A stretch of 64,000 nt of DNA from IMGVR_UViG_3300025009_000050:1-64000; one strand, 5' to 3'; shown: positions 1,128 to 35,979, counted from the stretch's first letter. Notes: generated from the sequence alone by a model not told the origin. Translations and numbers: made by a program.

Positions 1128-1664
1128 TTGAGCGCTAAGATGTTAATTAATAACTGGAAGGATACAGAGATTAATGCTTTAAAGAATGCATTAAATCTTA
1201 TGCCGACTCATCCAGTCAGTGTTACCTTTGCAAAGAATGTAATCAGTGGTAGGACGAGCCAAAGTATGGTAATGGCTTATCGTAAACACCTGGTCCCATC
1301 CATTATCAAAGGTCTCAAAAGTGCAATATCTGAGTATGGGTGTCCACTACCCGATAGTGTTATTTCAAATCTAGGAATAGAACTTGGGTATTCTTCGATA
1401 AGGATGAAAAAACTTGCCGATCATTACATTAAGAAAGGCATGTTCAAAAGCCTAATTAAGAAGTATACAGATAAGGCTGTAGTTAAGACACAGCTTCAGG
1501 TTGAATCCGATAAGAAAGTTACACAAAGTACTCCTGTATCAAGTAAACCTGTAAAGGCTACCATAACAACTACAATTGGTACTGATCCGGTGTCATTTAG
1601 AGTTGGTGACACTCTCTTCACTATCAAAATGACTAATGATGAAGTGAAGGTAACAGTACAATAG
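1128..1664 (+). CDS. Hypothetical protein
   Basis: 178-aa ORF with an AGGGGAG SD and TTG start; no recognisable motif. Confidence 0.6.
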   Translation: MSAKMLINNWKDTEINALKNALNLMPTHPVSVTFAKNVISGRTSQSMVMAYRKHLVPSIIKGLKSAISEYGCPLPDSVISNLGIELGYSSIRMKKLADHYIKKGMFKSLIKKYTDKAVVKTQLQVESDKKVTQSTPVSSKPVKATITTTIGTDPVSFRVGDTLFTIKMTNDEVKVTVQ

Positions 1665-1686
1665 CAGTCGTTAAGGAGGTGAGGTG

Positions 1687-1839
1687 ATGGGACCGTGGCT
1701 GTTTATTGACTTCTTAATTGCCATACTAGTAATTATATCCTGTATCATAGGTTTAAAGAGATTCTTCGTTAAATTTGGAGGATGGGTTAGTAATCTTTTC
1801 TCCATGCCGGAAGACGAAGATAATAAAAAAGAGGAGTGA
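1687..1839 (+). CDS. Small membrane protein (50 aa)
   Basis: GGAGGTGAGGTG SD; MGPWLFIDFLIAILVIISCIIGLKRFF is a hydrophobic helix; precedes the SPFH gene. Confidence 0.6.
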   Translation: MGPWLFIDFLIAILVIISCIIGLKRFFVKFGGWVSNLFSMPEDEDNKKEE

Positions 1840-1843
1840 TCGT

Positions 1844-2740
1844 ATGCAATTATCAACACATGGTAAGTTTGTGCTTGGAGGTACCATAGGAGGTATATTA
1901 GCATTTGTAATTCTCGTTATTGCCATTATGTGTACAATCAGTATTTCCCCAGGACAAGTAGGTGTCCTGTATGATCGAGCTAAAGGCGGCGTACAAAAAG
2001 ATCCTCTACTTCAAGGCTTCCATGTTATAATGCCTATTAAACAATCAGTTCAAGAATACCCGGTAAGTACGCAAACTTTGGAATTAACTGCTTCTAAAAC
2101 AGAGGGTAGCCCAGAAGACGAATCTTGGTTAATACCCACTAAGGAAAACTTGAATGTGAATATTGACAGTTATTTATCCTATCATATTGAACCAGCTATG
2201 GCTCCCCACGTATACAATAAGTTTAGGGGCCGTGATATCCAGGACATTGCACAGACTTATATCCGTACCAACATGAAAAACATCGCCCAAAACTGCACCG
2301 GAACATACAGTGTACTTGGCATTGCAGGTGATCAGCGTGAAGAAGCTTGTAACTTAATCACAAATAATTTAAAAGAGTTCTTTGGACCGGATGGAATCGT
2401 TGTTGAAAGATTCAACTTCGGTGAAGTCAGATTACCAAGCAGCATTCAAGCTTCCGTAAATGATAAGATTAATTCTGCACAACAGGCTCAACAGGCAGAA
2501 CTTATTCTTAAGAAGAAAGAAATTGAAATTAAACAGGCTGTAGCAGAAGCTCAAGGCCGTGCTCAAGCTATGACAATTGATGCTAAAGCTCAAGCAGATG
2601 CCAACAGAATCATTGCTGAATCATTAACACCGTCCCTTGTACAGTTGAAAGCCATTGAGAAATTCAATGATAAAGTTAATGTTATGATGGTGCCGCCTGG
2701 TATGTCAGTACTCTCAGGTATGCCTGGCTTATTCAAATAA
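1844..2740 (+). CDS. SPFH/band-7 (prohibitin/flotillin-like) membrane protein
   Basis: N-terminal TM helix, ISPGQVGVLYDR..GG, LLQGFHVIMP, VVERFNFGEVRLP, and an AEAQGRAQA coiled-coil tail. GAGGAG SD before ATG 1844. Confidence 0.9.
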   Translation: MQLSTHGKFVLGGTIGGILAFVILVIAIMCTISISPGQVGVLYDRAKGGVQKDPLLQGFHVIMPIKQSVQEYPVSTQTLELTASKTEGSPEDESWLIPTKENLNVNIDSYLSYHIEPAMAPHVYNKFRGRDIQDIAQTYIRTNMKNIAQNCTGTYSVLGIAGDQREEACNLITNNLKEFFGPDGIVVERFNFGEVRLPSSIQASVNDKINSAQQAQQAELILKKKEIEIKQAVAEAQGRAQAMTIDAKAQADANRIIAESLTPSLVQLKAIEKFNDKVNVMMVPPGMSVLSGMPGLFK

Positions 2741-2746
2741 GATATC

Positions 2747-2760
2747 GCCCCTTCGGGGGC
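2747..2760 (+). terminator. GC hairpin with cUUCGg loop after the SPFH gene (terminator or stabilising hairpin)
   Basis: GCCCC-TTCG-GGGGC; no strong U-tract follows. Confidence 0.45.
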
Positions 2761-2764
2761 ATTA

Positions 2765-2815
2765 CGGGCTAGCTAGTGGACTAGTCAAAGTAGGTTCGAT
2801 TCCTACCACGGCCCG
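2765..2815 (+). ncRNA. Anticodon-less tRNA-like element
   Basis: Closing stem CGGGCT/GGCCCG, D-like hairpin CTAG-TGGA-CTAG, canonical T-arm GTAGG-TTCGATT-CCTAC; no anticodon arm. Confidence 0.55.
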
Positions 2816-2835
2816 CCCTGATTAAATCTAAGGAG

Positions 2836-3087
2836 GTGATTGTCATAATAGTAGGTTTTTGTTCTGTAACTAAATATGCATGCAATGTTTATATTCATGA
2901 TGAAGCAATCATAGTGATAGGACTCGTAGGAAGTGAATTTCCACAATTTGATTTTAAACTATTCGATATCAATTATAGGTGCGATATATTCATACCGAGA
3001 AATCCTGATGTGAAGTTTAAAGAATATCAAACTATACCATATGTAAGTGCAGTTCCGATGAAAACCTTATTAATGAACTATGGATAA
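2836..3087 (+). CDS. Hypothetical protein
   Basis: 83-aa ORF with a GGAGGTG SD; the true start may be ATA at 2845. Confidence 0.45.
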   Translation: MIVIIVGFCSVTKYACNVYIHDEAIIVIGLVGSEFPQFDFKLFDINYRCDIFIPRNPDVKFKEYQTIPYVSAVPMKTLLMNYG

Positions 3088-3144
3088 CTTTGCCCAGCTG
3101 TGAGGGCCAATCCAGCACTAATTTACTTATATACATTTAATTCA

Positions 3145-3185
3145 GGAGCGGATGGCAGATGACAAATAAGTCCAATACCGCTCCA
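3145..3185 (+). pseudogene. tRNA remnant (acceptor stem plus start of D-arm only)
   Basis: GGAGCGG/CCGCTCC 7-bp stem followed by A; begins GGAGCGGATGGCAGA like a type-II tRNA; the interior is deleted. Ends 5 nt before the tmRNA. Confidence 0.4.
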
Positions 3186-3190
3186 TTCAT

Positions 3191-3939
3191 GGGCGTACCG
3201 GGTTTCGACGGAGCGTGAGAGTAAAACTTGCCTAGAGGTTGGTTACCATATAACCACAAGGCTTTAAATGCCAAAACTACTCTTCAAGCTGCCTAGTCTC
3301 TAATTAACTTTAGAGCTGGGAGATCAGCCCCAAAACACCGAGCTTATCCCAGCAATCGGATGAGGGTCAAAGAATGGGAGAGTCCTATCGGAAACAGTAG
3401 TTCGGAAGGGCTACAGATAGGCAATAGGTCATAGAAGGCGAAAGCAATCGCTCTTTCCGGTTTAGGACTGACTAGTAAGGTACGTAGGAGAACTATGGGT
3501 CGTTCTCTGAAGACAACCTGGTAGAGTATTAGAAACTGGCCTCGCATACATTAGTGCAACCCTAACCCATTAAGGAGTCGCTAATGATAATATGGTGGTA
3601 GGTGGCCGAAATTCAGTCCATGTAGGGTTAAAATCCCTACTCTATGGCAAATAGTTTCTTGCATCCTAAATGCAAGTGGTGGAGGTTAATAAATATCACT
3701 GGTGGCAAATTGGCAAAGCGACACGTCGGCTCTATATGTAACTAAGTGAGCTTACGGGTGTCCACCCAGAGGTTACACGCTGAAGCGTGGCTGTTATTAC
3801 AGTTTGTAGGTTCGACTCCTACCCAGTGATGAAAGTGAGCAAGCTACTTAGTGCTGCCGTTGACCACGATGGTCTATTCTAGGTAGACGGTTTAGGGTAA
3901 CAGTTCCGGACGGGGGTTCAACTCCCCCTACGTCCACCA
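3191..3939 (+). ncRNA. ssrA: tmRNA (SsrA), 749 nt, interrupted by a ~400-nt insert
   Basis: Acceptor GGGCGTA/TACGTCC with G3-U70 and encoded ACCA; 5' motif GGTTTCGACGG; T-arm GGGGG-TTCAACT-CCCCC; tag ORF 3270-3296 AKTTLQAA* after TTAAAT; helix 2a CGGAGC/GTTCCG; helix 2c TTGCCTAG/CTAGGTAG; pk4-like GACTGACTA at 3466-3474. Confidence 0.92.
3696..3830 (+). ncRNA. Expanded tRNA-like element inside the tmRNA insert
   Basis: Acceptor TCACTGG/CCAGTGA; Leu/Ser-type D-arm TGGCAAATTGGCAAAGC; stem GACAC/GTGTC enclosing 33 nt; 43-nt variable region with two hairpins; T-arm GTAGG-TTCGACT-CCTAC; no CCA. Confidence 0.7.
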
Positions 3940-3968
3940 TAAAACAAATATAAAGGAAGAAGTATAAT

Positions 3969-5527
3969 ATGAAACCAATTACTTCACAAGAATGCCTTGC
4001 AGCTCTTAAGGAAGGTATAACAAAGTTCGGCACCTATGATTACTATGATAAAGGTGTAGACAGTGTAATGTTTATACCTCCATTGCTCGACAGGTTTAAA
4101 CAAATGTCAGCTAAAGATGTTCAGAAGGTATTGCTTGAGGTACTTGAATATGAGCATGGGAAACATTTTGTTGGATTTATACTAATGTGTCTTGAAGAAA
4201 TGCCTGATGCATATTGGGATGAATTAACGAATGATCCTAGTCTAAATAAGCTATTACTTTAATAAAGTAATAGCTTTATGAGGTGATACTATGCAATGGT
4301 GTCTAAGATGTAATACATTAAGGGAAGATCATGAAAAGTATTGCCCAACATGTGTAGCTAAACTTGAAGAAGGCAGACGCATATTATTAGATTCAATTCG
4401 TACAGCTACAGAACTTATCCCACCAGATTGTCTTGTGATCCGAATTTTAAGACAAATCAATATAGACATAATCAGTCTAAAGACTGGTAGACCCTGGAGA
4501 TACATATTGTGAGGTGATTAGTAATGCAAGTACAGATCATATCTTTAGTTGGTACCGATAAAGTTGTCCGTGAAGGATTGTTCACTCTTATTTCTCCTCA
4601 TCTTGAAGAAGCTACGGCTGAAGCAGAAAAGGTTCAGCTTGTTGATCCTTATGCTGGAACAACTAAGATGCCATACCATAGTAGAGAAAGTGTACTCAAA
4701 CTCAATAACATTTATGTAGGTGAGTATAGAGTTGATACAGGTGACCCTCCATATTGCAGTTATTATACAACATGCTTAATTCATGAGTTTATTAGTCAGA
4801 TAATATTTACTAAGGAAGATAAGAAGCATTATCACACTATTGAAGCTGGCGAAGTTCATGAGGAAAAGTATATCTACGTTATTACACCAAAATAGTAGGA
4901 GGTGACGAATTGTTAAGTAACGTCTCCTTAAGTAACTTTATCTTCTGCGTAATTAATGAACCTGAAGCCAGTAACGGGTTTTTTATAATTATTAATACTC
5001 AGAAGTGTTGGAGTAATGATCATATTATTACTGATCATTATACTGACGAAGAATGGGATGTTCTCAGACCAGTTCTTTCAAAATATAACCTTATAGATAC
5101 AATGGAGTCTATTTATGAAAGCAATATGAGATTTACTCCTGATAAAATGACCCAGCTTTTACTTGCTGAAGGCTTGCAGCAGGATAGTTTATTCACTCAA
5201 TGGTGCAAAACAATCCCGTCATTTTATTAGCGCTCCTCTTACAAGAGAATAAGAACATAAGAAGGTGTATCATGCCAGTACTATTCTGGGGTTATATAAT
5301 CACAGTAGTTGTATTGTGGGTATTATGTAATTACTTTTAGGAGGTACTATATGTTAAGAGTAACTACTGATGAGAAAGAATTTACCGGAGTAAGTAGAGT
5401 AATAGTGTGTGATGATGGTTCACATCGTAATCCAAGGACTAATCTTCTTATAGAATTTACTAATAGTAGTGATACTGTTACTTTAACAGTAAATTCTATA
5501 TCAGATATTATAATAGATACGAAATAA
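3969..5527 (+). other. Run of small hypothetical ORFs (3969-4262, 4291-4512, 4524-4895, 4910-5230, ~5351-5527)
   Basis: Tightly packed ORFs with SD sites; 4291-4512 has a CxxC...CxxC motif; no function recognisable. Confidence 0.55.
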
Positions 5528-21506: not shown

Positions 21507-22091
21507 ATGAAAGTTAAATTTATTTATAAGTCTAAAAAATTTAAACATCCTGAAATCGCTGAAGCGATTAAGGAAGTGTTTGCCCATGTAGCTAGTACTA
21601 AATGGGCTAGATACTTCCCTAAGAAAGTAAAAGTTTTGTTTTTTAAGAATGCATTCTCTCATGATAATAGGTCTCCAGGTATGATGCGAGTAGACTGTTT
21701 CGGGCCTAAATTCTTTTTTGCTGTGGATGTGCTGCATGCAATGCATACTTTAGAGCCATATATTGATGTTGCTATTAATAATGGCAATGTGGTTTATGAT
21801 CATGTTCATGCAGCAAAATTAACTGCAGCACATGAAATTGGACACTGGCTGGTGTTATGTAGCTTAGCTAAATACCCTCAATTTGGAGGACATCCGATGG
21901 CGACTCATATATTAATGTCGGATACTTATTTCAGACATAGTGCTGAAAGTCACATCAATAAGCGAGACATAATGAATACTCAATTATCATATAGGAACGT
22001 ATTTGCTGAACGTTGCTCCGATAGGTTTGCAAGATTTATCGTAGCAAGAATGGGAGGTGCGGGTATTGAGAACACCAAACAGGACACCTAA
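21507..22091 (+). CDS. Putative zinc metallopeptidase
   Basis: AAHEIGHW (HExxH) with downstream ERCSDRFA (ImmA/IrrE-like ExxAxxFA). Confidence 0.6.
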   Translation: MKVKFIYKSKKFKHPEIAEAIKEVFAHVASTKWARYFPKKVKVLFFKNAFSHDNRSPGMMRVDCFGPKFFFAVDVLHAMHTLEPYIDVAINNGNVVYDHVHAAKLTAAHEIGHWLVLCSLAKYPQFGGHPMATHILMSDTYFRHSAESHINKRDIMNTQLSYRNVFAERCSDRFARFIVARMGGAGIENTKQDT

Positions 22092-23102: not shown

Positions 23103-24323
23103 ATGCAACCCAAGGAGATTAAGAAGGCATATAGAAGATCAATGAACCAAGCTTTAGAAGCAGGCGTTGATCTTCCTGAATGGATTGATATGTCTACAGC
23201 TAAACTTAAAGAAAAGCTGAATGAAGAAATAGCTACTGGATCTATTGATCCAATGGAAGCAATGAACCTCATTATAAGACATGACCAGTTGATGAAAGAA
23301 GTCCTGGGATACGGCAAGGAACATGGACTTAAACCATTGTCTAAAAAGCAAAGATGTATTAAAGCTATTGATGACATAATGCTCGACACTAAATACGGCT
23401 TTAGAGACATAGTATTTGGCCTAAGAAAGAGGTTTGGTAGCAAAGGAGAACTACAAAAAATGATCAACGAACTAAATCCTGACACACTGAAAGATACAAT
23501 GGAAACTAGATGCAAGTATGTTTGCAGCGCTGATATCGCTATGAACATCTACGTAGCGCTTGCCCTTGGTAAGCCATTACTAGTTGAAGGACCACCTGGC
23601 TGTGGTAAAACAGAGTTAGCAAAAGTACTTTCCACAATCTTTAACACAAAGCTTATCCGGCTACAATGTTATGACGGGATCGACGCTACTCATGCACTTT
23701 ATGAGTGGAACTATCAGAAACAGATCCTTGACATACAACGTGGTAAAGGCGATGGGAATATCTTTGGTGAAGATTACTTGCTTGAAAGGCCATTACTCCA
23801 AGCATTGAGAGAAGAACCTACTCCGGTTCTACTTATTGATGAAGTGGATAAAGTCGACCAAGAGTTCGAAGCTCACCTTCTTGAAATACTGTCTGACTTT
23901 CAGGTATCAATACCTGAATATGGAACAGTAATCGCTAAGAAGATTCCGCCAGTTATCCTTACGTCTAATGGGGTAAGAGATCTTGGTGATGCACTTCGTC
24001 GTCGTTGTGTTTACCTTTGGGTCGGGTTTCCGACCATTGATAAGGAAGCAACAATCTTGATGAAAAAAACTGATACTTTGCGACCTAACACTGCTCTACA
24101 GATTGCTAGAATCATGAGTGTTATTCGTAATGAGGTCAACTTGCTCAAACAGCCTAGTGTTTCAGAAAGCCTGGACTTAGCTGCAGCCCTTACAAACATG
24201 GGCATAAGAAAAATTGAATCTCCCTTGCTTGATCAATTGACAACTCTGTTTCTTAAAAACAGAGAAGATCTGGATAAGATGCAAGAGAGAGGTGGAGCGA
24301 AATGGCTGTTGGAGCGGGCGTAA
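23103..24323 (+). CDS. MoxR-family AAA+ ATPase with N-terminal extension
   Basis: LLVEGPPGCGKTELAK, RLQCYDGID...LYEWNY, LLIDEVDK, LTSNG.R.L.DALRRRC. Confidence 0.92.
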   Translation: MQPKEIKKAYRRSMNQALEAGVDLPEWIDMSTAKLKEKLNEEIATGSIDPMEAMNLIIRHDQLMKEVLGYGKEHGLKPLSKKQRCIKAIDDIMLDTKYGFRDIVFGLRKRFGSKGELQKMINELNPDTLKDTMETRCKYVCSADIAMNIYVALALGKPLLVEGPPGCGKTELAKVLSTIFNTKLIRLQCYDGIDATHALYEWNYQKQILDIQRGKGDGNIFGEDYLLERPLLQALREEPTPVLLIDEVDKVDQEFEAHLLEILSDFQVSIPEYGTVIAKKIPPVILTSNGVRDLGDALRRRCVYLWVGFPTIDKEATILMKKTDTLRPNTALQIARIMSVIRNEVNLLKQPSVSESLDLAAALTNMGIRKIESPLLDQLTTLFLKNREDLDKMQERGGAKWLLERA

Positions 24324-25180
24324 GAGACGCCCACCTAGACTTTTGGAACTGGATGACAAATACCAACCAGCAACAGCAGTCGCAGGTACAAAGTAAACCA
24401 GGTGATGAGGATGGGCCGGAAGGCCCACCTGGACAACCTGGGCAACCTGGAGCAGGAAAAAGTGATGGCAATCTTACGAGACCTAATATACATGAAGACG
24501 AGGTACTTAAGGCACGTAGAAATATGCGGAAAATTGCCAGACAGATCATTACAGCAATGTCTCGTCATCGCAAGGAAAGTAAGAAAATGGCTATGATCAA
24601 TTTCCGTAAGACTATAAACAATGCAAAGTCTACTGGTGGTATACCAATTCAGATCAGCTGGAAGGTTAAAAAAATTCATAAGCCTAGACTACTAGTACTT
24701 TTAGATACGTCAGGCTCAATGGATCGACATGCTAAAACATTGACTTTAATTTGTCAGGCAGTCGGTCAGGAGATCTCTAAGTTTGAGCTATTTATATTTT
24801 CAAATAAGCTCGAATATGTAACCAAGGATATTAGGACTGACTGGAGAGAGACATTGACTAATCTCGAAAGAAGACAACAATGGGGCGGTGGAACTGATTT
24901 GCCCAAAGCCCTTAAAAAGCTATTAAAAGATTATCATAATAAATTGTCTCCTCAAACTGTTGTATTTATCATGTCTGACCTCGATACACGTGGTTCAGAA
25001 GAAGCACCTGGACTTGTTGAGGAAGTAAGAAGAAAGAGTAAGAGTCTGTATATATTCAATCCTGATGAATACGAATATAAACATTATGAGAATGCCTATG
25101 AAGGCAAAGCAACCAAAATGTTTCTGACTCCTACACTTGAAGATATGGCAAATGCTGTTAAGCAAGCTTGTCTTAAGTAA
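24302..25180 (+). CDS. VWA-domain protein (CoxE-like MoxR partner)
   Basis: MIDAS motif LLDTSGSM, GGGTD, MSD; coupled to the MoxR gene; short GPPGQPGQPG linker. Confidence 0.88.
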   Translation: MAVGAGVRDAHLDFWNWMTNTNQQQQSQVQSKPGDEDGPEGPPGQPGQPGAGKSDGNLTRPNIHEDEVLKARRNMRKIARQIITAMSRHRKESKKMAMINFRKTINNAKSTGGIPIQISWKVKKIHKPRLLVLLDTSGSMDRHAKTLTLICQAVGQEISKFELFIFSNKLEYVTKDIRTDWRETLTNLERRQQWGGGTDLPKALKKLLKDYHNKLSPQTVVFIMSDLDTRGSEEAPGLVEEVRRKSKSLYIFNPDEYEYKHYENAYEGKATKMFLTPTLEDMANAVKQACLK

Positions 25181-25263: not shown

Positions 25264-25644
25264 GTGAGAACAGTTCAGTATGCAGGTAACAATTTGGTAA
25301 TCGAAGATGACACTATGTCCCTGGCTCAAATTAAAGAGTCTATGGCTGAAATTTTTCCGGAGCTGCAAAATGCTACTCCAACCCAAGAAGGCGAGATCAT
25401 CAAATTCGAGGTTAAGGCTGGTACCAAAGGTACTCGTACAGTTCAATACGCAGGCAACAACCTCGTTATTGAGGATGACACAATGACCCTGGCTCAGATC
25501 AAGGAATCCATGGCTGAGATCTTCCCTGAACTTCAAAATGCTACTCCAACCCAAGAAGGCGAGATTGTTAAGTTTGAAGTTAAAGCTGGTACCAAAGGTC
25601 TCTTCTCTCGCTTCTTGCAAGCCATCGCTAAGCTGCGTGGTTAA
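25264..25644 (+). CDS. Tandem di-ubiquitin-like protein (PRTRC protein C-like) with 14-aa C-terminal tail
   Basis: Two 56-aa units (53/56 identical), each ending KAGTKG, with the FPEL.NA motif; tail LFSRFLQAIAKLRG; lies upstream of the E2/JAB/E1 genes. Confidence 0.8.
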   Translation: MRTVQYAGNNLVIEDDTMSLAQIKESMAEIFPELQNATPTQEGEIIKFEVKAGTKGTRTVQYAGNNLVIEDDTMTLAQIKESMAEIFPELQNATPTQEGEIVKFEVKAGTKGLFSRFLQAIAKLRG

Positions 25645-25651
25645 GTCTAGT

Positions 25652-25673
25652 TATGGTGGGCTTTTGCCCACCA
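25652..25673 (+). terminator. Hairpin terminator after the Ubl gene
   Basis: ATGGTGGGC-TTTT-GCCCACCAT. Confidence 0.65.
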
Positions 25674-25705
25674 TTAACAGGTAAATATGTTACGGTGGTG
25701 TTTAT

Positions 25706-25963
25706 ATGTCAACTGAAAACTTAGCTAAAAACTTACTTCATCTGCCCAACTACGATTATTTACCTATTGAGGTAAGGATAGTAGTTGATAAAGTAATTAA
25801 TGCTACAAATGCCAATGATTTAATGAAAGTGCCCTTAGACGACATACTCAAAGCTCATAAAGAAGTAGTAAACCGACAGCCTGTAGTCATAAATCAAATA
25901 TCAGAACTTGTCGAAAAGATCAAAAGAATCCCTGCTATTGTGGCAAGCTCAGACTATATATAG
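25706..25963 (+). CDS. Small helical hypothetical protein
   Basis: 85-aa ORF inside the Ubl locus. Confidence 0.55.
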   Translation: MSTENLAKNLLHLPNYDYLPIEVRIVVDKVINATNANDLMKVPLDDILKAHKEVVNRQPVVINQISELVEKIKRIPAIVASSDYI

Positions 25964-26026
25964 AAAGGAGGAACAGAAATTAATACTTCTGTAGAAATCC
26001 TACGTCGTGCTGACTTCATAGAACTT

Positions 26027-27211
26027 GTGAAAATTGGCAGACAGAAAGGTATTGAGAAGTTTGCTGAGAATATTGAAATTCCAATTGATATCGCAGAATT
26101 CAGTACACTTATCAAAAAGCTAAGTAAGGAATTAATCATATCATTAATACCAGGATGTTATGTCCGTCAAAATGACAATGATTTCTCTATAAGATTTGAA
26201 GGAGAAATCTTTGACATGATTAAGATGTTGGAGGACTCTATTCATATTTATAAGTTCCCATCACCAAGAATTGCACATGTTCTATTGGAGCTAAACATAG
26301 CTATAAGTGGATTCCATGATACAAGAATCCGCAATGGGAAGAGATACATTTATATCCCATTGGACTTAGACTCTATGTATCTTCGTCATCAGCGCGTCTT
26401 ATCCAACTCATTGGCAGGAGTTATGAATATGGGTGTTGTGCTAGACAAACTTAAGCAATGTCATGACGAATTAAGCGGTGACATCCAAGCGTTCATACAA
26501 AAGAAGAAAGATAAGCTTGCTGAATTGCAAAAAATGCAGCGTGAAATAGCTGAACGCAAGAAGACACAAATAGTTGAAGCTGTTAGGATTCAACCTATCC
26601 CGACTCCTGAACCAAAAACGTTGATAAACTCACTTATAGATCAACTTAGCACTAAAACTATGACAATGCAAGAAAGATTGAACCAAGTGTTAGCAAAGAA
26701 TACTGGCAAAACTGCTACAGCAGATACCAGATTATCAACAATCAGGAAATGGGTGCAAATAGGAGACACCGTTAGAATCATAGTAAAAACTGGCCCCAAT
26801 CTAAGGAATAGAGATTATTATATCTATCCTCCTGAAGTAGAGCTTGATATTCCGGCAGGTTATCGTCAACACCTTGGAGTGGATAGGATTGAAATTATAT
26901 TAACCGAGCCTGATCCACGACATGATACTGTTGTAAAAACTAATAGTAAACTCCACTGTAACTTCAACGAAGAACATTGGATGCCACTCAAAAACCTTTA
27001 CGAAAATGAAGTGAAGAACAATGAACCAGGATTTTACTACAAGAAGAACGGGAGCTTTGTAGTAGTTGATGAAAAGAAAAGGGAGTTCCCGTTTAAGAAC
27101 TATGAGTCTGCTGTGGAACTCATAAACATGACTGGATTAGGTTTTGATATAACGAAGGTAATGGTTTATGAAAATCCATCCGTAATAGCAGATGTAGGGG
27201 AGGAAAGCTAA
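26027..27211 (+). CDS. Hypothetical protein with central coiled coil, in the Ubl operon
   Basis: 394-aa ORF whose stop overlaps the E2 start; the true start may be slightly upstream. Confidence 0.65.
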   Translation: MKIGRQKGIEKFAENIEIPIDIAEFSTLIKKLSKELIISLIPGCYVRQNDNDFSIRFEGEIFDMIKMLEDSIHIYKFPSPRIAHVLLELNIAISGFHDTRIRNGKRYIYIPLDLDSMYLRHQRVLSNSLAGVMNMGVVLDKLKQCHDELSGDIQAFIQKKKDKLAELQKMQREIAERKKTQIVEAVRIQPIPTPEPKTLINSLIDQLSTKTMTMQERLNQVLAKNTGKTATADTRLSTIRKWVQIGDTVRIIVKTGPNLRNRDYYIYPPEVELDIPAGYRQHLGVDRIEIILTEPDPRHDTVVKTNSKLHCNFNEEHWMPLKNLYENEVKNNEPGFYYKKNGSFVVVDEKKREFPFKNYESAVELINMTGLGFDITKVMVYENPSVIADVGEES

Positions 27212-27930
27212 TGAAACCACGGGCTGTATTAGAGATTCACGCAGATAGCGTGAGATTAATTGAACATGATGAAAATGGGATTTCTAAAACAAGGCAAATT
27301 TCACCGGATGGCCTTGCTCAAGCAGTTGCCAATGACTTTCGGCATGATACAGGTATCATGCCTTCTCCTCACGGAGTTGTGAGGATGATTAAGAAAAACG
27401 CTAGCACTTTGATAGTATATCAGATACCTGAAACTAGAAGGCGTATTAGTTATCAGGATGAAGGCTCTGTAGGAGTTTACAAGAATGTGCTTGTACCTAG
27501 CTGTGTATTTATATTTATTCTTAATCAACATCAAAATGGAGAATATATGTTAAGATTAAGCCATGTATATGCTGCTAAGGGTCCAATACTCATTACAACA
27601 GATACATTGTGTCGCTTCCCATTCACCAATGTTCAGGACGATGCTAATATATGTTGGGGTGGACATAGCACAGCAAAACAATGGAGGAATCTTGCCGGTA
27701 TATCTGGGTTCGTTGAGCAATTCTTTAGCTCAAATTTTAATGCGCACCTTGAGAACAGTAACTTCTATCCGTTGGCTGTGCAAACACCTAATGGCAGGAC
27801 AGTAAGGGTTGACAGGGTTCATAGCCTAATTAAACATCTTGATGGTGTTGCTACATTCCCGTATGAAATCCTTAAACCGTTAAGGTCTGTAGCAAGCATA
27901 ATTCAAAATTTGGAAGGAGAATTGAGATAA
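27211..27930 (+). CDS. Prokaryotic E2-like protein (Prok-E2 family D / PRTRC B-like)
   Basis: VLVPSCVFIF...LCRFPFTNVQDDANICWGG...FFSSNFN; PFxNV...ICWG signature with Cys. Confidence 0.8.
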   Translation: MKPRAVLEIHADSVRLIEHDENGISKTRQISPDGLAQAVANDFRHDTGIMPSPHGVVRMIKKNASTLIVYQIPETRRRISYQDEGSVGVYKNVLVPSCVFIFILNQHQNGEYMLRLSHVYAAKGPILITTDTLCRFPFTNVQDDANICWGGHSTAKQWRNLAGISGFVEQFFSSNFNAHLENSNFYPLAVQTPNGRTVRVDRVHSLIKHLDGVATFPYEILKPLRSVASIIQNLEGELR

Positions 27931-29357
27931 TGTCATTAAAAGATGAGCTGGAAGCTCAGGTTAGAGAGAAAGAAGCACAAAAGGCTGCAAGTAAGGCTGC
28001 ATTAATCAGACAAGCTGCTGATTATCTTATTGATGTTCCTGCAGAAGGTCTTACCAAGGCTGTTAACTACATCATGACTGCGGATGGTACAAAGATGGTA
28101 CGGCACACTGGAATGGGTGACTTTGTAATGATACCGGAGACTGTTCCCGGCTTACAAAAACTTAAGTTAGGCTTGAATCTGTCCATTCCTAAGATTCCGT
28201 TTCATATGATTTGCCAGATCCTGAACTTCTTTATAGCTGTTCATGAGAAGGACAAAACCGAAGCGTCTGCTCTAATCTTCTGGGATCAGGACACAAAAGA
28301 GCATTTCATTTACATCCCTGAACAGAAAAACTCTGGTGGACTTTCAGAGTTCCATGAAGATCCGGAAGTAAATCGCTTACGCCTTGATAAAGTTCCTGTA
28401 ATGGAAATCCACAGCCATCATACTATGGGAGCTTTCTGGTCTGGTACTGACAATGCCAATGAAAATGCAGCTCAGTGCTACATGGTATTTGGTACTATCA
28501 CTACTAGCCCAACTTACCTCACACGTTATGCGTGTGCTGGTCAGCAAGTTAATATCCCCATATGGGAAATCGTAGAGAAACCTGAGATTGCTATGAATGT
28601 AGCTAACCAAAAGTATTTACTTCAGGTACCTGAGGTAATGGGTATATTCCCGAAAGTTAGCTTCCCGGAAGAGTGGATGACGAAGCTAAAAAAGCCCACA
28701 GTAGTTGGTTGGCAAGGTGGAAGAGATTATCTAACCTATGGTAATAACGGTAAAGTAACTACTTTTGGTGCTGGCGCAACTACTGAAGCCATTCCTCAAA
28801 AAAAATGGTATTTTCACGGGGCCGGGACAGACGCAGAAACAAATTCGGAAAAAAAAACTGACGGAGCAGACGTGCACAGACTGCAAACAAATGTATTGTC
28901 TGGACCCGAACACAGAGCGGATGTGCCCAATCAGAGTCGAGTAAAGAATATCATTGATTTTGTTGTGAAAAACTTTGACGATATATCTCTCTCCCAGTTG
29001 ATATTGACAGCAATGTTCTCTGGGAGAGATGTAGTGAGTCCAGTTGAAAAAGGCATTAAGTATATCAACGAAAATCCGAATATGTTTAAGCCTCAACAAG
29101 ATCTTGAAAATTGTTACACCTGTGAGCTCGCAAGCCTGTGTGAAGTATGCAGCGGTAAGTGTTGCGAATGTGATAGAATTAAAGAATGTCAGCCTATTTT
29201 AGATTTTGCAGCTAAGAAAAATCTTGAGGCTGCAAAAACTGTCGAAAGCTGTGATGGACCGGATTGTCCACATTACACCTTTTGTATGTCATGCACATTA
29301 CAGTATCGTTGTTGCGATTGTACAATCGAAGATTGTAAGAATGTGCACTTAAAATAG
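27930..29357 (+). CDS. JAB/MPN metallo-isopeptidase (PRTRC A-like) with Cys-rich C-terminus
   Basis: EASALIFWD...YIPEQ...EIHSHHTMGAFWSGTD.ANE (E...HSH..S..D); two Cys clusters at the C-terminus. Confidence 0.85.
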   Translation: MSLKDELEAQVREKEAQKAASKAALIRQAADYLIDVPAEGLTKAVNYIMTADGTKMVRHTGMGDFVMIPETVPGLQKLKLGLNLSIPKIPFHMICQILNFFIAVHEKDKTEASALIFWDQDTKEHFIYIPEQKNSGGLSEFHEDPEVNRLRLDKVPVMEIHSHHTMGAFWSGTDNANENAAQCYMVFGTITTSPTYLTRYACAGQQVNIPIWEIVEKPEIAMNVANQKYLLQVPEVMGIFPKVSFPEEWMTKLKKPTVVGWQGGRDYLTYGNNGKVTTFGAGATTEAIPQKKWYFHGAGTDAETNSEKKTDGADVHRLQTNVLSGPEHRADVPNQSRVKNIIDFVVKNFDDISLSQLILTAMFSGRDVVSPVEKGIKYINENPNMFKPQQDLENCYTCELASLCEVCSGKCCECDRIKECQPILDFAAKKNLEAAKTVESCDGPDCPHYTFCMSCTLQYRCCDCTIEDCKNVHLK

Positions 29358-29370
29358 TAAGGAGGTAATT

Positions 29371-30231
29371 ATGTCTATACTTGAAAAGACTTACGCACTT
29401 GATTTTGATGCGGTGACCAATAACGCACCGCATCATTACATAATCATAGGTAATGGTGGCACTGGTGGATTCTTGGTACCCAATCTTGTAAGACAGATTA
29501 GTATTAAGAATTACACCCGTAAGGAAGGCCAAAAGCATATGATAACTCTTGCTGATCCGGATAAAGTTGAGGAGAAAAACTTAACTCGGCAAAACTTCAT
29601 TATGCCAGACCTGAATAAAAGTAAGGCTATGGTGCTTGCTGCCCGTTATTCAAATGCCTTCGGAACACCAATCAACGCTCATGATGCTTATGTAGAGACC
29701 AAAGCAGCATTGAAGATGCTTATGGATCTACATAAGAACTGTTATCCGATAATTATCGGTGCAGTTGATAATAATAAGACCAGGCAGTTGATAGCCGATC
29801 TGTTCTATTCCGGTGAGAGAAATATGGTATATCTTGACAGCGGCAACGAACTTTACAATGGCCAGGTAGTATTGGGAGTAAACCATAAGGGAACACTTCA
29901 GGAAGGTAATAATAAACCACATTCATTCTACATGCCTTGTGTCACTGATGTCTTCCATGATGTTATGAATGATACCAATACGAAGTTTACCACAGAATTA
30001 AGCTGTGCTGAGCGGGCTATTAGCCATCCTCAGTCTATGGCAACTAACTCAACAGCAGCAATGTTGATATTCAACTTCTGCAATGTTTTGCTTAACAACA
30101 AGGAAATGGGTGGATTAAGGGTCAATGCAGTTACATTCAATGTAAAGAACAATGGCTTTGATCCAAAACGCAATACCAAGGATCAGTTGAACTTAAGATA
30201 CATTAAGAAGCAAGCTGCTGCCGCTGGCTAA
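29371..30231 (+). CDS. E1-like ThiF-family activating enzyme (PRTRC ThiF-like)
   Basis: IIGNGGTGG, DPDKVEEKNLTRQNF, KAMVLA.RY, GAVDNNKTR, LDSGN, LSCAE. Confidence 0.92.
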   Translation: MSILEKTYALDFDAVTNNAPHHYIIIGNGGTGGFLVPNLVRQISIKNYTRKEGQKHMITLADPDKVEEKNLTRQNFIMPDLNKSKAMVLAARYSNAFGTPINAHDAYVETKAALKMLMDLHKNCYPIIIGAVDNNKTRQLIADLFYSGERNMVYLDSGNELYNGQVVLGVNHKGTLQEGNNKPHSFYMPCVTDVFHDVMNDTNTKFTTELSCAERAISHPQSMATNSTAAMLIFNFCNVLLNNKEMGGLRVNAVTFNVKNNGFDPKRNTKDQLNLRYIKKQAAAAG

Positions 30232-30286: not shown

Positions 30287-32590
30287 TTGATACGTGTGAT
30301 GCCAAATGGCAATGTTCTTGAGCTCAGGATTTCTGGGTTATCAGGAAGGATTTTTTATGATATAATTGAAACAGTAAAAGCCATCCCCGGTAGAAAGTAT
30401 CGAGATGGTATATGGCTTGTCCCTGTAAATCAAGCAGGGTTGTTACTCGAAGTCTTTGGAGATGAGCTTACTTGGGAAGTTCCATATGAAGAGATAGTAA
30501 AGGAGCCCAGTAAGCCCGAAACACCTCCAATAAAAATTATTGATGTCAATCTTAAGCTAGCTTTATACCCATTCCAGCTAGTAGGAGCTTCTTTCTTAGT
30601 ACATATTAAGAAAGGTCTCCTAGGCGATGAAATGGGTTTAGGTTCGGTCGGAGCCGTCCTAAGATGAAAGTCTTAGGAGTACTAGAGGCGGAATTAAGCT
30701 GGGAAGCTGAGAATGCTAATCAGAACCGAAGGCGTAAGTGGAAACTTACTTGACTATGGTGACATAGTTAATAGCTCTATACCGAGCTAGTCAGGGGCAA
30801 CGCATAGACAGTGAGATAATCTGTCCACGAGGCCGCCCTACCTAAGTCAGCGAATTAGTTTGTGTCTGTGAATAATGCCACTTTGCAAACTATTGGCAAA
30901 GGATGAATGGAACTGCATTGAGTCCAAGATGCAGCAGTCTCGATGCCATGAGTAACATAGTTAAATATGGCACAATGACGGTATAGACGTAGTGAATCTA
31001 TATGAAAATTAATAAACTATATTGTATCTCCAATATAGCTCCTACCAGATAATGCTGAGGATGAAGCGAGAATAGCAGACACTTAATGATATGGTAAAAA
31101 GTTATGCTGAGCTCCCATGAGTTTACATGGGCTCTGGTGGTAGCCACCAGGAGCGAACAAGAAGCTCCAGAAGTAGAGGATAAAAAGCCACTACGATAAC
31201 AAAACTGAAAACTCCACAATCCATAGGTGCTGCGGATTATCTTATTTGTAATGGTTTAGCCAAGAGAATATTGGTAATTTGCCCTGCATCACTAAAGTAT
31301 CAGTGGGAAGATGAGATTGGAAAGTTTACTAACTATAGTGTTACAGTAATTGATGGAGACCTCGGAGATAGAGTTAAAATCTATAAAGAGAACGATAGCA
31401 TCTTCACAGTAATAAACTATGAGTTAGTGCGTCAGGATATGGACTTAGACAGATTAAGAGCATTAGATGCAGATGTTATAATCCTTGATGAAGCACATAA
31501 GATAAAGAACAAGGATGCGATAACAACTAAACAGATTATGCAGTTGGATGCTAAGTATAAATGGCTACTAACTGGAACACCAATGCAGAACCGTCCTGAT
31601 GAATTGTATAGCTTGTTCTCATTTATGAACCCTGAAATATTAGGAAGTTGGACATCATTCAGAAACAGATATATAGTCATGGGAACGAAATTTGGAAGAC
31701 GTGGCATTATATTGGGATATAAAAACCTCAATGAATTACGTGGAAGGATCTCTCTATATATACTGCGTAGACTTGTTGATGAAGTAGCTCCTGAACTTCC
31801 GTCTGTGTTAATTAATAATTTCACAATCCCTATGACAAAAGAACAAGCAGCCCTACATGAGGATATACGTCTTGTCATACGTGATATCATGGAAGAGATG
31901 AAATCATGGGATAAGGACGAGCCGCATCCTAAAGAAGGTCAGCTACTTGGTATGTTCACAATGCTTACTGAAGTAAGTGATTCTCCACAACTACTGTCTA
32001 TGAGTACATCACGGATGGCGTCTAAATTTGCTATTAAATCCACAAAGTCTCCTAAGCTAGATGAGTTATATGAACTTATGCAACTTAAACTGGAAGATAA
32101 TCCAGATTTAAAAGCCGTCATATTTACTCAATTTGAGCGTATGCAGAGACTTATAGTTGAAAGACTTAGTAAACTAGGTGGGTGTAGGGTACTCAATGGT
32201 AAAATGAAACCATATGAAAGACAAGCTGCTATAGACAGATTTAGGTTTGATAAAGATGTGAAGTTCTTTGTCTCTACTGACGCTGGGAACGCAGGAATTA
32301 ATCTTCAAATAGCATCAGTATTGGTAAATTACGATCTTCCATGGAATCCAGCTACATTGAAGCAAAGAATTGGTAGGATACGTAGAATTGGCTCAGAATT
32401 TAAGACTGTCAATGTAGTTAACCTTATATCACAAGACAGCATAGATGAGCGAATATTACAAGTCCTATATTCTAAGACAGAATTATCAGACCAGATTGTT
32501 GAGAAGACTGATCAAGAGAAAGCCATAATATCTAGTCTTACCGGAAACATTATTGACAAACTCACAAAGCAGAAAAGGAAGAGGAAGTGA
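30287..32590 (+). CDS. SNF2-family helicase, split by a group I intron (exon 1 30287-30643, exon 2 31208-32590)
   Basis: Joining the exons restores Walker A LGDEMGLG|KTPQ; also VICPASLKYQW, IILDEAH, LTGTPMQN, FTQF, STDAGNAGINLQ, QRIGRIRRIG. Confidence 0.92.
30644..31207 (+). mobile_element. Group I self-splicing intron, 564 nt, no homing endonuclease
   Basis: Exon ends in U paired to G30653 in P1; terminal G31207; P2 CCTAAGAT-GAAA-GTCTTAGG; P3 GGCGG/CCGCC; P7 GCATAG/TTATGC; P9 hairpins. Confidence 0.9.
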
Positions 32591-35277: not shown

Positions 35278-35979
35278 ATGTACACTATCTCCCGTGAAAT
35301 GGCTTATGATCTTATCCGTATGTATGTTGAACGTCTACATGTTGGCGAAGTAAAACATGGAATGCCGGGAAAGAAGTTGGAGAAGTGGACTGTAGCCAAA
35401 GATGGGCTTACAAGTCTACTTGTCCAAATAAAACTTAATGGCGATGATCCTGACAAAATACTCAATGACATAAAGGAAGAACTTGGTATCCGTTTCTCTC
35501 ACAAAGAATTAATTATAAGAATAGATGGTGCTGCCAGAGGAAATGATAATCCAGATATAGACAATAAGTCTGCACTTGCTTTTATCATTTACGGTGATGG
35601 AAATGAGATAACAAGGTATGCGGAATATATTGGCTCACACATCATTATCCCGAAGAGTGGAATTGACGACGCATCTGTAGCGCGAGCTACTAGTAATGTG
35701 GCTGAATATATGTCCTTGATTAGCTCTCTTGAATACCTGATTGAGAAGGAGATCACTGCTCCTAATATTATATTCTTAAGTGACAGTAATGTAGTTGTCC
35801 AGCAAATTAATGGCACTAATGCTACTAGGGCACCTCATCTTGTAAAGCTTAGGAATAGGGCAAGATTATTATCAAAGCGACTTCCTAACTTTACCATAAG
35901 GCATGTACCTAGAGAAGAGAACGCTGAGGTGGACCTATTGGTGAATAAAATATTAGATGAGCAGGAAACAAATGCTTGA
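35278..35979 (+). CDS. rnhA: Ribonuclease HI-like protein with N-terminal extension
   Basis: IRIDGAARGN, TSNVAEY, SDSNVVVQQING, HVPREENAEVD.L.N. Confidence 0.88.
   Translation: MYTISREMAYDLIRMYVERLHVGEVKHGMPGKKLEKWTVAKDGLTSLLVQIKLNGDDPDKILNDIKEELGIRFSHKELIIRIDGAARGNDNPDIDNKSALAFIIYGDGNEITRYAEYIGSHIIIPKSGIDDASVARATSNVAEYMSLISSLEYLIEKEITAPNIIFLSDSNVVVQQINGTNATRAPHLVKLRNRARLLSKRLPNFTIRHVPREENAEVDLLVNKILDEQETNA

What the first reader, a model, noticed from the sequence alone, without database searches (positions are those of the whole stretch)
25264..30231. Complete phage-encoded ubiquitin-like conjugation module (Ubl, E2, JAB, E1)
Seen: a co-oriented, largely coupled gene set of Ubl-Ubl, a small ORF, a 394-aa unknown, an E2-like protein with Cys in ICWG, a JAB with intact E/HSH/S/D and a ThiF E1 with a candidate catalytic Cys in LSCAE. 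Established knowledge: this matches the PRTRC-type prokaryotic Ub-like cassette, whose substrates are not established. Bacterial E1/E2/JAB systems with known function (CBASS Cap2/Cap3, Bil) act against phages. Inference: here the phage carries the machinery, placed between a MoxR/VWA chaperone pair and a SNF2 helicase. It may modify host or phage proteins during infection or jam host Ubl-based immunity. No ParB partner is visible in this window.
Basis: partly seen in the sequence, partly recalled or inferred. Interest (0 to 1): 0.85.

Follow-up and report, generated by a model that had tools for sequence, protein, structure and literature searches.

The report
Phage polyubiquitin-like conjugation gene cassette
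A jumbo phage carries a complete, apparently working set of ubiquitin-like tagging genes, fed by a tandem "polyubiquitin-style" precursor; the same six-gene set is conserved in a whole clade of Bacillus-type jumbo phages, including the lab-tractable prophage pBtic235, but what it tags is unknown.

Summary
Window 25264-30231 encodes six co-oriented genes. They are a di-Ubl precursor, a small acidic protein, a large orphan protein, a Prok-E2_D E2, a JAB peptidase and a ThiF-type E1. All four Pfam hits pass the gathering thresholds and the catalytic residues are conserved. The window is the first 64 kb of a 244-kb IMG/VR jumbo-phage contig.

The same ordered cassette is in Bacillus phages vB_BceM_WH1, Edson and KLEB27-3. 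It is also in several UViGs and metagenome contigs, in the inducible jumbo prophage-plasmid pBtic235, and in B. velezensis pAD3. The precursor holds 2-9 head-to-tail units. Each unit ends in AG[TV]KG, and a short variable cap follows the last one. Units within a genome are nearly identical in protein but random at synonymous sites.

The core is related to the uncharacterised PRTRC / "6D" family. It scores below all four NCBIfam cut-offs and lacks ParB and proteins E and F.

Most likely mechanism: JAB cuts the precursor, E1 and E2 pass the Ubl through thioesters, and the Ubl is joined to unknown targets during lytic growth. The MoxR/VWA and SNF2 neighbours are not conserved. I rate it a new variant of a known but unstudied kind, and it is experimentally tractable.

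The parts
25264..25644 (+). Poly-Ubl precursor. Unit 1 is 25264-25431 and unit 2 is 25432-25599 (56 aa each, both ending AGTKG). A 14-aa cap runs 25600-25641, followed by the stop codon.
   Evidence: Pfam Prok_Ub 32.8 bits and TIGR03738 E 1.1e-8. hhalign to canonical PRTRC_C gives E 1.1e-5 with the AG[TA]KG C-termini in register. Between the two units, 4 of 128.7 nonsynonymous sites differ against 27 of 36.3 synonymous sites. AF2 predicts each unit as beta-beta-alpha-(alpha)-beta-beta at mean pLDDT 65.
25647..25680 (+). GC-rich stem-loop directly after the Ubl stop codon; a likely terminator or attenuator.
   Evidence: RNAfold gives -22.7 kcal/mol for the 64-nt spacer. A comparable strong hairpin, several with U-tracts, follows the polyUbl gene in 9 of 9 genomes. 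The simple terminator scan did not flag it because this copy has no T-run.
25706..25963 (+). Small acidic accessory protein (85 aa) with an invariant C-terminal D-[FY]-I.
   Evidence: Positional homologues sit in every cassette. Only the terminal D and I are invariant. No Pfam, NCBIfam, PHROG or PADLOC hit. No similarity to PRTRC protein E.
25979..27211 (+). Large orphan accessory protein: 410 aa from ATT 25979, or 394 aa from GTG 26027.
   Evidence: The start is inferred from the Shine-Dalgarno site and the alignment to L016. The family has only 54 representatives at E<=1e-3 among 1.84 billion proteins. Only G43 and P268 are invariant, with no conserved Cys, His or acidic residue. AF2 pLDDT 63: N-terminal alpha/beta domain, 65-residue helix, C-terminal beta-rich domain. 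Foldseek and the ESM Atlas found nothing. No similarity to PRTRC protein F.
27211..27930 (+). E2-like conjugating enzyme (239 aa), candidate catalytic Cys148.
   Evidence: Prok-E2_D 55.3 bits and TIGR03737 E 7.6e-13. P137, N140, C148 and G150 are invariant in 12 sequences including canonical PRTRC_B. The Asn lies 8 residues before the Cys; that this matches the HPN...C spacing of classical UBC enzymes is from my own knowledge, not a tool result.
27930..29357 (+). JAB/JAMM metallopeptidase (475 aa). It has an N-terminal alpha+beta region, the JAMM core (about 28170-28554), a low-complexity linker and a Cys-rich C-terminal module (about 29112-29354).
   Evidence: Prok-JAB 29.9 bits and TIGR03735 E 1.1e-10. 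E111, H161, H163, S171 and D174 are conserved. The Cys-rich module is a separate 144-aa ORF in L016 and has no Pfam match.
29371..30231 (+). ThiF-type E1 adenylating enzyme (286 aa, single domain), candidate catalytic Cys212.
   Evidence: ThiF 45.9 bits and TIGR03736 106.9 bits. The nucleotide-binding and Mg motifs are invariant; C212 is kept in 10 of 11 aligned sequences, and the eleventh has SC one position away. 40-44% identical to the ThiF of WH1, KLEB27-3 and pBtic235.

Best explanation
This is a functional, phage-encoded ubiquitin-like protein-conjugation pathway. It is a diverged, ParB-less relative of the PRTRC / '6D' operon type.

Proposed steps:
1. The Ubl gene is made as a polyubiquitin-style precursor: two units here and up to nine in relatives, followed by a short C-terminal cap. 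A hairpin after the gene probably keeps its expression above that of the enzymes.
2. The JAB metallopeptidase cuts after each ...AGTKG. This releases 56-residue monomers with a free C-terminal glycine.
3. The single-domain ThiF-type E1, presumably a homodimer, adenylates that glycine and takes it onto Cys212.
4. The E2 accepts it on Cys148, with Asn140 acting as the oxyanion-hole residue.
5. The Ubl is joined to target lysines. No E3 is recognisable. The fast-evolving E2, together with the small D-[FY]-I-tailed protein and the large non-enzymatic protein, most likely supplies target choice. Alternatively these accessory proteins are themselves the targets.
6. JAB may also reverse the modification.

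The pathway is part of the phage's lytic programme and is inherited vertically with the replication-gene backbone.

Shown here: gene content, family matches, conserved catalytic residues, precursor architecture, purifying selection, clade-wide synteny, and induction of the pBtic235 JAB and E1 genes.

Inferred: every biochemical step and the target class. My leaning is virion-associated phage proteins (about 0.35), host proteins (about 0.3) or competing phages (about 0.15).
For: Family matches and catalytic residues.

Precursor architecture:
- Every unit in 9 genomes ends AG[TV]KG, as does single-copy canonical PRTRC_C, which ends AAGAKG plus 5 residues.
- The residue after the Gly is variable.
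- Caps range from 1 residue (N) to 18 residues. Copy number is 2, 2, 2, 4, 4, 4, 5, 6 and 9.

Each unit is under strong purifying selection. Within-genome dN is mostly 0-0.09, up to about 0.25 for pAD3 and the first WH1 unit. Synonymous sites are saturated, and same-codon frequency equals the random expectation. All units are therefore used, and the repeat is not an assembly artefact or a recent duplication.

The six-gene order is conserved at 20-50% protein identity across WH1, KLEB27-3, the UViGs L005 and L007, L016, L021, pBtic235 and pAD3. It sits in the same backbone: a tRNA nucleotidyltransferase-like gene upstream in KLEB27-3 and L016, and an RVT_3 gene and DnaE downstream in pBtic235 and pAD3. 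E1 and DnaE diverge in parallel (window versus WH1: 44% and 45%).

In pBtic235 the JAB and ThiF genes rise about 16-fold (log2FC about 4) 30 min after mitomycin C, together with the neighbouring replication genes (PMC9700832 supplement).

A hairpin follows the Ubl gene in 9 of 9 genomes.

The large protein has no conserved catalytic-type residue. E2, small and large proteins diverge fastest.
Against: - No biochemical datum exists for this family or for PRTRC / 6D in the literature I could search.
- The fold test of the Ubl was inconclusive. The AF2 model has only moderate confidence. Foldseek found no ubiquitin-like structure in the PDB. Its one significant viral hit is a 299-aa entry, 50% identical, probably the WH1 homologue.
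- No solved relative of the E2 or the Ubl exists by sequence.
- The Ubl ends in KG, not GG.
- No E3 and no target were identified.
- The related Bub / 6E pathway shows that such systems can use unexpected chemistry (PMC11601596).
- Nearly all pBtic235 genes respond to mitomycin C, so the induction is not specific to the cassette.
Confidence: 0.65

Rival explanations
1. The cassette is an anti-phage or superinfection-exclusion system that the phage merely carries. It would work like Bil, tagging proteins of competing phages, and be paid for by protecting the lysogen or the infected cell.
For: All bacterial E1/E2/JAB systems with a known role are antiviral (PMC11601596). pBtic235 is temperate and shares its host with phage GIL01 (PMC9700832). 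A preprint reports a PRTRC protein B in a Phocaeicola prophage as one of two recurrent mutational hotspots and links it to a DGR, which suggests a variable, conflict-type target. E2 and the accessory proteins evolve fast.
Against: The cassette sits at a fixed place in the replication backbone across very deep divergence, not in a variable island. It is present in phages isolated as free virions (WH1, Edson, KLEB27-3). It rises with lytic genes on induction rather than being a lysogeny-expressed gene. PADLOC gives only weak E1-E2 hits to the ThiF domain.
Confidence: 0.12
2. The tandem Ubl is not cut into monomers. It would act as one multi-domain modifier, as in ISG15, BilA or BubA, with only the last unit activated after the cap is removed.
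For: Bub / 6E Ubls have 1-3 beta-grasp domains and are used whole. Iyer et al. described 2-3-domain polyUbls in 6e operons.
Against: Every internal unit keeps the exact AG[TV]KG end and is near-identical to its neighbours under strong purifying selection. Unit number varies from 2 to 9 among related phages. Linkers between units range from 0 to 5 residues. Dosage-type repeats fit a cleaved precursor better than a fixed architecture.
Confidence: 0.1
3. The ThiF-like enzyme and the Ubl form a sulfur-carrier or small-molecule / peptide adenylation pathway (ThiS/MoaD- or MccB-like), not a protein-tagging pathway.
For: The E1 also matches ThiF/MoeB models weakly. Single-domain E1s of this size are typical of sulfur transfer.
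Against: A conserved E2 with an invariant Cys and Asn, a JAB peptidase and a multi-unit precursor have no role in sulfur transfer. No thiazole or molybdopterin synthase gene is nearby.
Confidence: 0.03

Closest known systems
PRTRC cassette (TIGR03734-03742), the '6d' operon type of Iyer, Burroughs & Aravind 2006 (PMC1779556)
   Same: It has separate genes for a small Ubl ending AG[AT]KG, a Prok-E2_D E2, a JAB and a single-domain ThiF E1. These lie in the same order (C ... B, A, ThiF), with two extra proteins around the Ubl gene. The best HMM hits of all four core proteins are to this family. Like this cassette, it is carried on mobile DNA, and I found no report of its function.
   Different: All four proteins score below the NCBIfam cut-offs. 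There is no ParB. The small and large accessory proteins show no similarity to proteins E and F. The Ubl is a 2-9-unit precursor rather than a single copy. The small protein follows rather than precedes the Ubl gene. The His said to follow the catalytic Cys in 6d E2s is not conserved. The carrier is a jumbo phage rather than a conjugative plasmid or ICE.
Eukaryotic polyubiquitin genes (such as yeast UBI4)
   Same: Head-to-tail identical modifier units each end in Gly. A short non-ubiquitin cap follows the last unit (one Asn in L021). Unit number is variable. Selection on the protein is strong while synonymous sites differ. The comparison with UBI4 rests on my own knowledge.
   Different: The unit is a 56-residue Prok_Ub-type domain ending KG. 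Processing would be by a JAB enzyme encoded in the same operon. The architecture probably arose independently.
Bil (BilABCD) antiviral ubiquitination system
   Same: It has a Ubl, an E2, a JAB peptidase and an E1 without an E3, and the E2 is thought to pick the target. Bil tags a phage tail protein.
   Different: [quoted passage not shown] Bil belongs to the host and acts against phages. There is no PADLOC Bil hit.
Type II CBASS Cap2/Cap3
   Same: It combines E1 and E2 chemistry with a JAB peptidase that reverses it. The weak PADLOC 'E1-E2' hits fall on the ThiF domain.
   Different: Cap2 is an E2-E1 fusion that conjugates the cyclase itself. There is no free Ubl there, and no cyclase or effector here.
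Bub / 6E operons (PMC11601596)
   Same: It is a bacterial Ubl pathway whose Ubl has multiple beta-grasp domains, and a JAB processes a precursor.
   Different: Bub lacks catalytic cysteines (it uses Tyr and Ser oxyesters), fuses its enzymes and has the DUF6527 protease. Here both cysteines are conserved and DUF6527 is absent.
Lambda / T1 tail-assembly Ubl (gpI) and JAB (gpK) (PMC1779556)
   Same: It is a phage-encoded Ubl-like domain plus a JAB peptidase tied to virion assembly.
   Different: It has no E1 or E2, it lies in the tail module, and there is no sequence relation to this cassette.

Membership tests
PRTRC system (NCBIfam definition) | ThiF protein reaches the TIGR03736 cut-off (144.75 bits) | tested here: not met
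   106.9 bits.
PRTRC system (NCBIfam definition) | Proteins A, B and C reach the cut-offs of TIGR03735, TIGR03737 and TIGR03738 | tested here: not met
   A scores 41.4 against 101.8. B scores 48.3 against 131.45. C scores 35.1 against 45.95.
PRTRC system (NCBIfam definition) | Associated ParB-family protein | tested here: not met
   tblastn with the Cupriavidus PRTRC ParB found nothing in the window or in 8 related loci at E<=10. The other 180 kb of the contig were not examined.
PRTRC system (NCBIfam definition) | Proteins E and F | tested here: not met
   No NCBIfam hit. hhalign of the phage small and large protein profiles against PRTRC E and F gave probabilities of 0.04% and 0.2%. Proteins of similar size do occupy similar positions.
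6d operon type (Iyer et al. 2006) | Separate Ubl, JAB, E1 and E2 genes in one operon, with an E2 of the Prok-E2_D type that has a conserved Cys | tested here: met
   Pfam Prok-E2_D 55.3 bits (above the gathering score of 25). C148 is invariant.
6d operon type (Iyer et al. 2006) | Absolutely conserved His C-terminal to the catalytic Cys of the E2 | tested here: not met
   The positions after C148-x-G hold H, E, Q, S or N in different phages, and no column is invariant.
6d operon type (Iyer et al. 2006) | Extra fast-evolving alpha-helical protein with conserved charged residues | tested here: inconclusive
   The large protein is fast-evolving and partly helical, including a 65-residue helix. Its only invariant residues are Gly and Pro, with R47 and R56 nearly invariant.
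Pfam Prok_Ub / Prok-JAB / ThiF | Score at or above the gathering threshold | tested here: met
   32.8 against 25, 29.9 against 25, and 45.9 against 28.1.
Ubiquitin-like beta-grasp fold | Predicted 3D structure matches solved ubiquitin-like folds | tested here: inconclusive
   The AF2 secondary-structure order is compatible with a beta-grasp at pLDDT 65. Foldseek against the PDB gave no hit at E<=0.001. Against BFVD, the only significant hit was a 299-aa entry, 50% identical, probably the WH1 homologue.
Polyubiquitin-type precursor | Head-to-tail near-identical units each ending in the activatable Gly, plus a C-terminal cap | tested here: met
Polyubiquitin-type precursor | Proteolytic release of monomers | not testable with these tools
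   This needs a JAB cleavage assay or MS.
Bil system | [quoted passage not shown] | tested here: not met
   The E1 is a single 286-aa ThiF domain. PADLOC gave no Bil hit.
Type II CBASS | E2-E1 fusion (Cap2) with a CD-NTase and an effector | tested here: not met
   E2 and E1 are separate genes. No cyclase was found among the ORFs I scanned around the cassette.
Bub / 6E | No catalytic Cys in E1 or E2, and a DUF6527 protease | tested here: not met
   Both cysteines are conserved. There is no DUF6527 hit.

The most novel reading that the evidence does not exclude
A whole clade of jumbo phages and phage-plasmids of Bacillales runs its own ubiquitin-like tagging pathway, fed by an independently evolved polyubiquitin-style gene. 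It would use this pathway on virion-associated proteins. The Ubl would either be a covalent decoration or cement of the particle, or the Ubl and enzymes would be packed into the virion and delivered into the next host. That would be the mirror image of the host's Bil defence and the first ubiquitination-like system known to work for a bacterial virus.
Probability: 0.2. Interest if true: 0.85.

Novelty: new variant of a known kind. Interest (0 to 1): 0.68.

Why it matters
Bacterial E1/E2/JAB systems have recently become a major theme (CBASS Cap2/Cap3, Bil, Bub). The fourth predicted type, 6D / PRTRC, has no reported function or structure in the literature and PDB copies I could search.

This cassette is a phage-owned version of that type, and its carriers can be grown and induced. 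pBtic235 is an inducible, plaque-forming prophage of B. thuringiensis israelensis. WH1, Edson and KLEB27-3 are cultured phages. The open question "what do 6D / PRTRC systems tag?" therefore becomes directly testable.

It also shows that viruses of bacteria, not only their hosts, can own a full Ubl pathway. The polyubiquitin gene architecture (many identical units plus a cap, processed by a dedicated peptidase) has an apparent counterpart outside eukaryotes.

Tried and rejected
- Near-identical DNA in GenBank phages: none found.
- PHROGs and PADLOC: nothing specific for any cassette protein. The PHROG 'hits' to the WH1 polyUbl have zero significant stretches each and are probably repeat artefacts.
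- Word-index protein search for E2 and the large protein: only the query's own cluster plus one relative.
- Structure route for the large protein: AF2 pLDDT 63, and Foldseek against the PDB and the ESM Atlas gave nothing meaningful.
- Structure route for the di-Ubl: no ubiquitin-like hit, probably because the two-domain, medium-confidence model is a poor query.
- PDB sequence search: nothing for the Ubl or E2, and only a weak ThiF-fold hit (9egb) for E1.
- Homology of the small and large proteins to PRTRC E and F: rejected.
- Selection for codon scrambling between repeat units: considered and dropped. Same-codon frequency equals random expectation in 7 of 8 genomes (only WH1 is lower, z = -3.4). 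Old duplications under purifying selection explain the data.
- MoxR/VWA and SNF2 as parts of the system: rejected, because they are not conserved next to the cassette.
- Rfam search of the SNF2 insert: no intron family matched.
- Pfam search of the Cys-rich module: nothing.
The E1 alignment found only four Bacillales contigs, and these belong to a different single-Ubl variant.
- Literature: no paper in the library links phages WH1 or KLEB27-3, or Pfam Prok_Ub / Prok-E2_D, to this topic. The jumbo-phage comparative review does not mention Ubl systems.

Full report
**What the window is.** All long ORFs lie on the + strand and GC is about 37%. The window encodes a DnaE-type polymerase, NrdD, a UvsX-like recombinase, a primase, a helicase, RtcB and two tRNAs. 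It is bases 1-64000 of IMGVR_UViG_3300025009_000050, a 244,052-bp viral contig. It has no near-identical DNA in GenBank phages. Its polymerase is closest (40-45% identity) to the Bacillus jumbo phages vB_BceM_WH1, Edson and vB_BauM_KLEB27-3.

**The observation.** The six ORFs are present as described.
- Four have family matches above the Pfam gathering scores: Prok_Ub, Prok-E2_D, Prok-JAB and ThiF. In NCBIfam, their best hits are PRTRC proteins C, B, A and the PRTRC ThiF.
- The Ubl ORF is two 56-codon units, both ending AGTKG, plus a 14-residue tail.
- I aligned 10-12 homologues, including a canonical PRTRC set from a Cupriavidus plasmid. The named residues are conserved:
  - E2: P137, N140, C148 and G150.
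  - JAB: E111, H161, H163, S171 and D174.
  - E1: glycine loop, D64, R73/Q74, K85, D133, R138 and C212.
- The E2 Asn lies eight residues before the Cys. From my own knowledge, this matches the HPN...C spacing of classical UBC enzymes.
- The large ORF most likely begins at ATT 25979 rather than GTG 26027. A perfect AGGAGG lies 7 nt upstream, and the 16 extra residues align with the closest homologue from its first residue.

**Conservation.** The cassette order is polyUbl, small protein, large protein, E2, JAB, E1. That order is conserved in the following:
- WH1 and KLEB27-3. Edson gives tblastn matches to the Ubl, E2 and E1, though I did not inspect its gene order.
- IMG/VR jumbo contigs of 251 and 264 kb.
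- A closer metagenomic relative, L016, and an ENA contig, L021.
- The 235-kb plasmid pBTHD789-2, which is pBtic235 of B. thuringiensis israelensis, and B. velezensis pAD3.

pBtic235 is a proven inducible, plaque-forming temperate jumbo myophage that replicates as a plasmid (PMC9700832 and PMC8026635). Only three of 50,697 GenBank phage records carry the Ubl and E2 at tblastn level. The large protein family has just 54 representatives among 1.84 billion proteins. The cassette is therefore rare but is a hallmark of this clade.

Its position is also conserved. A tRNA-nucleotidyltransferase-like gene lies upstream in KLEB27-3 and L016. An RVT_3 (RNase H-like) gene and DnaE lie downstream in pBtic235 and pAD3. 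E1 and DnaE diverge to a similar extent. Both points suggest vertical inheritance.

The MoxR/VWA pair upstream is shared only with L016. The SNF2 gene downstream is shared with none of the cassette-bearing relatives.

**The precursor.**
- Unit number is 2 (window, L016, L005), 4 (KLEB27-3, pBtic235, pAD3), 5 (WH1), 6 (L007) and 9 (L021).
- Every unit ends AG[TV]KG. The next residue is variable, and linkers are 0-5 residues long.
- Canonical single-copy PRTRC_C ends AAGAKG plus five residues. It aligns with a phage unit end to end.
- Units are 93-100% identical in protein within most genomes, and less so in pAD3 and the first WH1 unit. Between genomes they are only 25-73% identical.
- Their synonymous sites are saturated: 27 of 36 in the window. 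Codon sharing equals what independent draws from local codon usage would give.
- My reading is that each unit is kept by strong purifying selection, with slow birth-and-death turnover and no DNA-level homogenisation. This is what is described for eukaryotic polyubiquitin (my own knowledge).
- A strong hairpin follows the precursor gene in all nine genomes, and three are clear intrinsic terminators. This would set Ubl mRNA above that of the enzymes.

**The accessory proteins.**
- The small protein is poorly conserved except for an invariant C-terminal D-[FY]-I.
- The large protein has an N-terminal alpha/beta domain, a long helix and a beta-rich C-terminal domain at moderate confidence. It has no invariant Cys, His or acidic residue and no detectable relative in Pfam, NCBIfam, PHROGs, the PDB or the ESM Atlas.
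- Neither protein resembles PRTRC protein E or F, although they occupy comparable positions.
- I read them as specificity factors or substrates. This is inference.
- The window's JAB carries a Cys-rich C-terminal module that is a separate ORF in L016. It matches no known family.

**Function.** The gene set, the conserved nucleophiles and the cleavable-looking precursor point to protein conjugation rather than sulfur transfer.
- In pBtic235 the JAB and ThiF genes rise about 16-fold 30 min after mitomycin C, along with the adjacent replication genes. The cassette therefore belongs to the lytic programme. Nearly the whole prophage responds, so this is not specific.
- Two annotation leads suggest a link to virions:
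  - WH1's polyUbl (gp211) is labelled 'virion structural protein'. In that record the label is applied selectively, and neither gp211 nor the similarly labelled gp208 has any Pfam or PHROG basis for it.
  - In Salmonella phage Arash, a more distant E2-JAB-ThiF cassette has its E2-like and ThiF proteins labelled 'structural protein'.
  - I could not establish where these labels came from.
- A preprint reports a PRTRC protein B of a Phocaeicola prophage as one of two recurrent mutational hotspots, and links it to a diversity-generating retroelement. That fits an E2 that recognises variable targets.
- The target class remains open.

**Comparison with known systems.**
- The core is closest to the PRTRC / 6d type defined bioinformatically in 2006. 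I found no functional or structural study of it.
- The cassette fails the NCBIfam membership cut-offs and lacks ParB, E and F. The 6d-specific His after the catalytic Cys is not conserved. It is therefore a diverged relative.
- It differs from Bil in E1 architecture. It differs from Cap2/Cap3 in having no fusion and no cyclase. It differs from Bub / 6E in keeping both cysteines and lacking DUF6527.
- Other variants exist. Bacillales megaplasmid-size contigs have a single Ubl between E2 and JAB. A 15-kb viral contig has a single capped Ubl. Vibrio phages D69, D148 and D181 have E2-JAB-ThiF.

**Verdict.** The PRTRC label is only approximate, and the flanking genes are incidental. The most notable features are the polyubiquitin-style precursor and the clade-wide conservation in cultivable jumbo phages. 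I rate it a new variant of a known but unstudied kind, with interest 0.68.

Noticed in passing
window 30287-32590 (insert 30644-31207): The SNF2 helicase gene is split in one reading frame between GLG and KT of motif I by a 564-nt stop-rich insert with no ORF. A U precedes the 5' junction and a G ends the insert, as in group I introns. No Rfam family matches at E<1. The spliced protein would be 579 aa.
   Followed up: partly
window 25979-26027: The large cassette ORF probably uses a non-canonical ATT start with a perfect Shine-Dalgarno site. ORF callers limited to ATG/GTG/TTG truncate it by 16 residues.
   Followed up: yes
window 25264-25599, and polyUbl genes in L001, L002, L005, L007, L012, L013, L016, L021: Repeat units are near-identical in protein but as different at synonymous sites as random codon choice would make them (WH1 is even more different, z = -3.4). 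There is no DNA-level repeat for recombination to act on.
   Followed up: yes
window 29112-29354; L016 11832-12266: A Cys-rich module (two C-x2-C ... CC-x-C clusters) is fused to the JAB C-terminus in the window. It is a free-standing 144-aa ORF between JAB and E1 in the closest relative. No family match; possibly metal-binding.
   Followed up: partly
window 23103-25180: A MoxR-type AAA+ ATPase (best NCBIfam hit MadB, 226 bits) overlaps a CoxE-type VWA protein by 22 nt. This pair sits directly upstream of the cassette here and in L016 only.
   Followed up: partly
window 21507-22091: A 194-aa ORF contains an HEIGH (HExxH) metallopeptidase-like motif but has no Pfam hit. It has a homologue in L016.
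   Followed up: no
L028 (Salmonella phage Arash, OQ632216) 1340-4539; L029 (Vibrio phage D69) 2896-5939: Large phages of Gammaproteobacteria carry a distant E2-like / JAB / ThiF cassette. In Arash, the E2-like and ThiF proteins are annotated 'structural protein'. Small ORFs just upstream end in SFV (Arash) and DYV (D69), reminiscent of the D-[FY]-I tail.
   Followed up: partly
L001 (WH1) 3823-4722: The five-unit polyUbl of phage WH1 is annotated 'virion structural protein' with no homology basis I could find. The label may come from virion proteomics.
   Followed up: partly
L024-L027 (Brevibacillus, Anaerobacillus, Robertmurraya, Bacillus yapensis contigs; two are about 222 kb): This is another Bacillales variant. 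It has a longer E2-domain protein, then a single Ubl (ending GGAKG or GTSKG+AALL) between E2 and JAB, then E1.
   Followed up: partly
L014 (Cupriavidus plasmid) 1-1699; L010 3300-5921: An SNF2-type or related helicase gene also lies near the canonical PRTRC cassette and near a JAB-E1 pair in a 47-kb viral contig, as it does in the window. This may be coincidence.
   Followed up: no
window 35278-35979: An RVT_3 (RNase H-like) gene is homologous to the gene that directly follows ThiF in pBtic235 and pAD3. In the window, about 5 kb (SNF2 plus small ORFs) has been inserted between them.
   Followed up: yes
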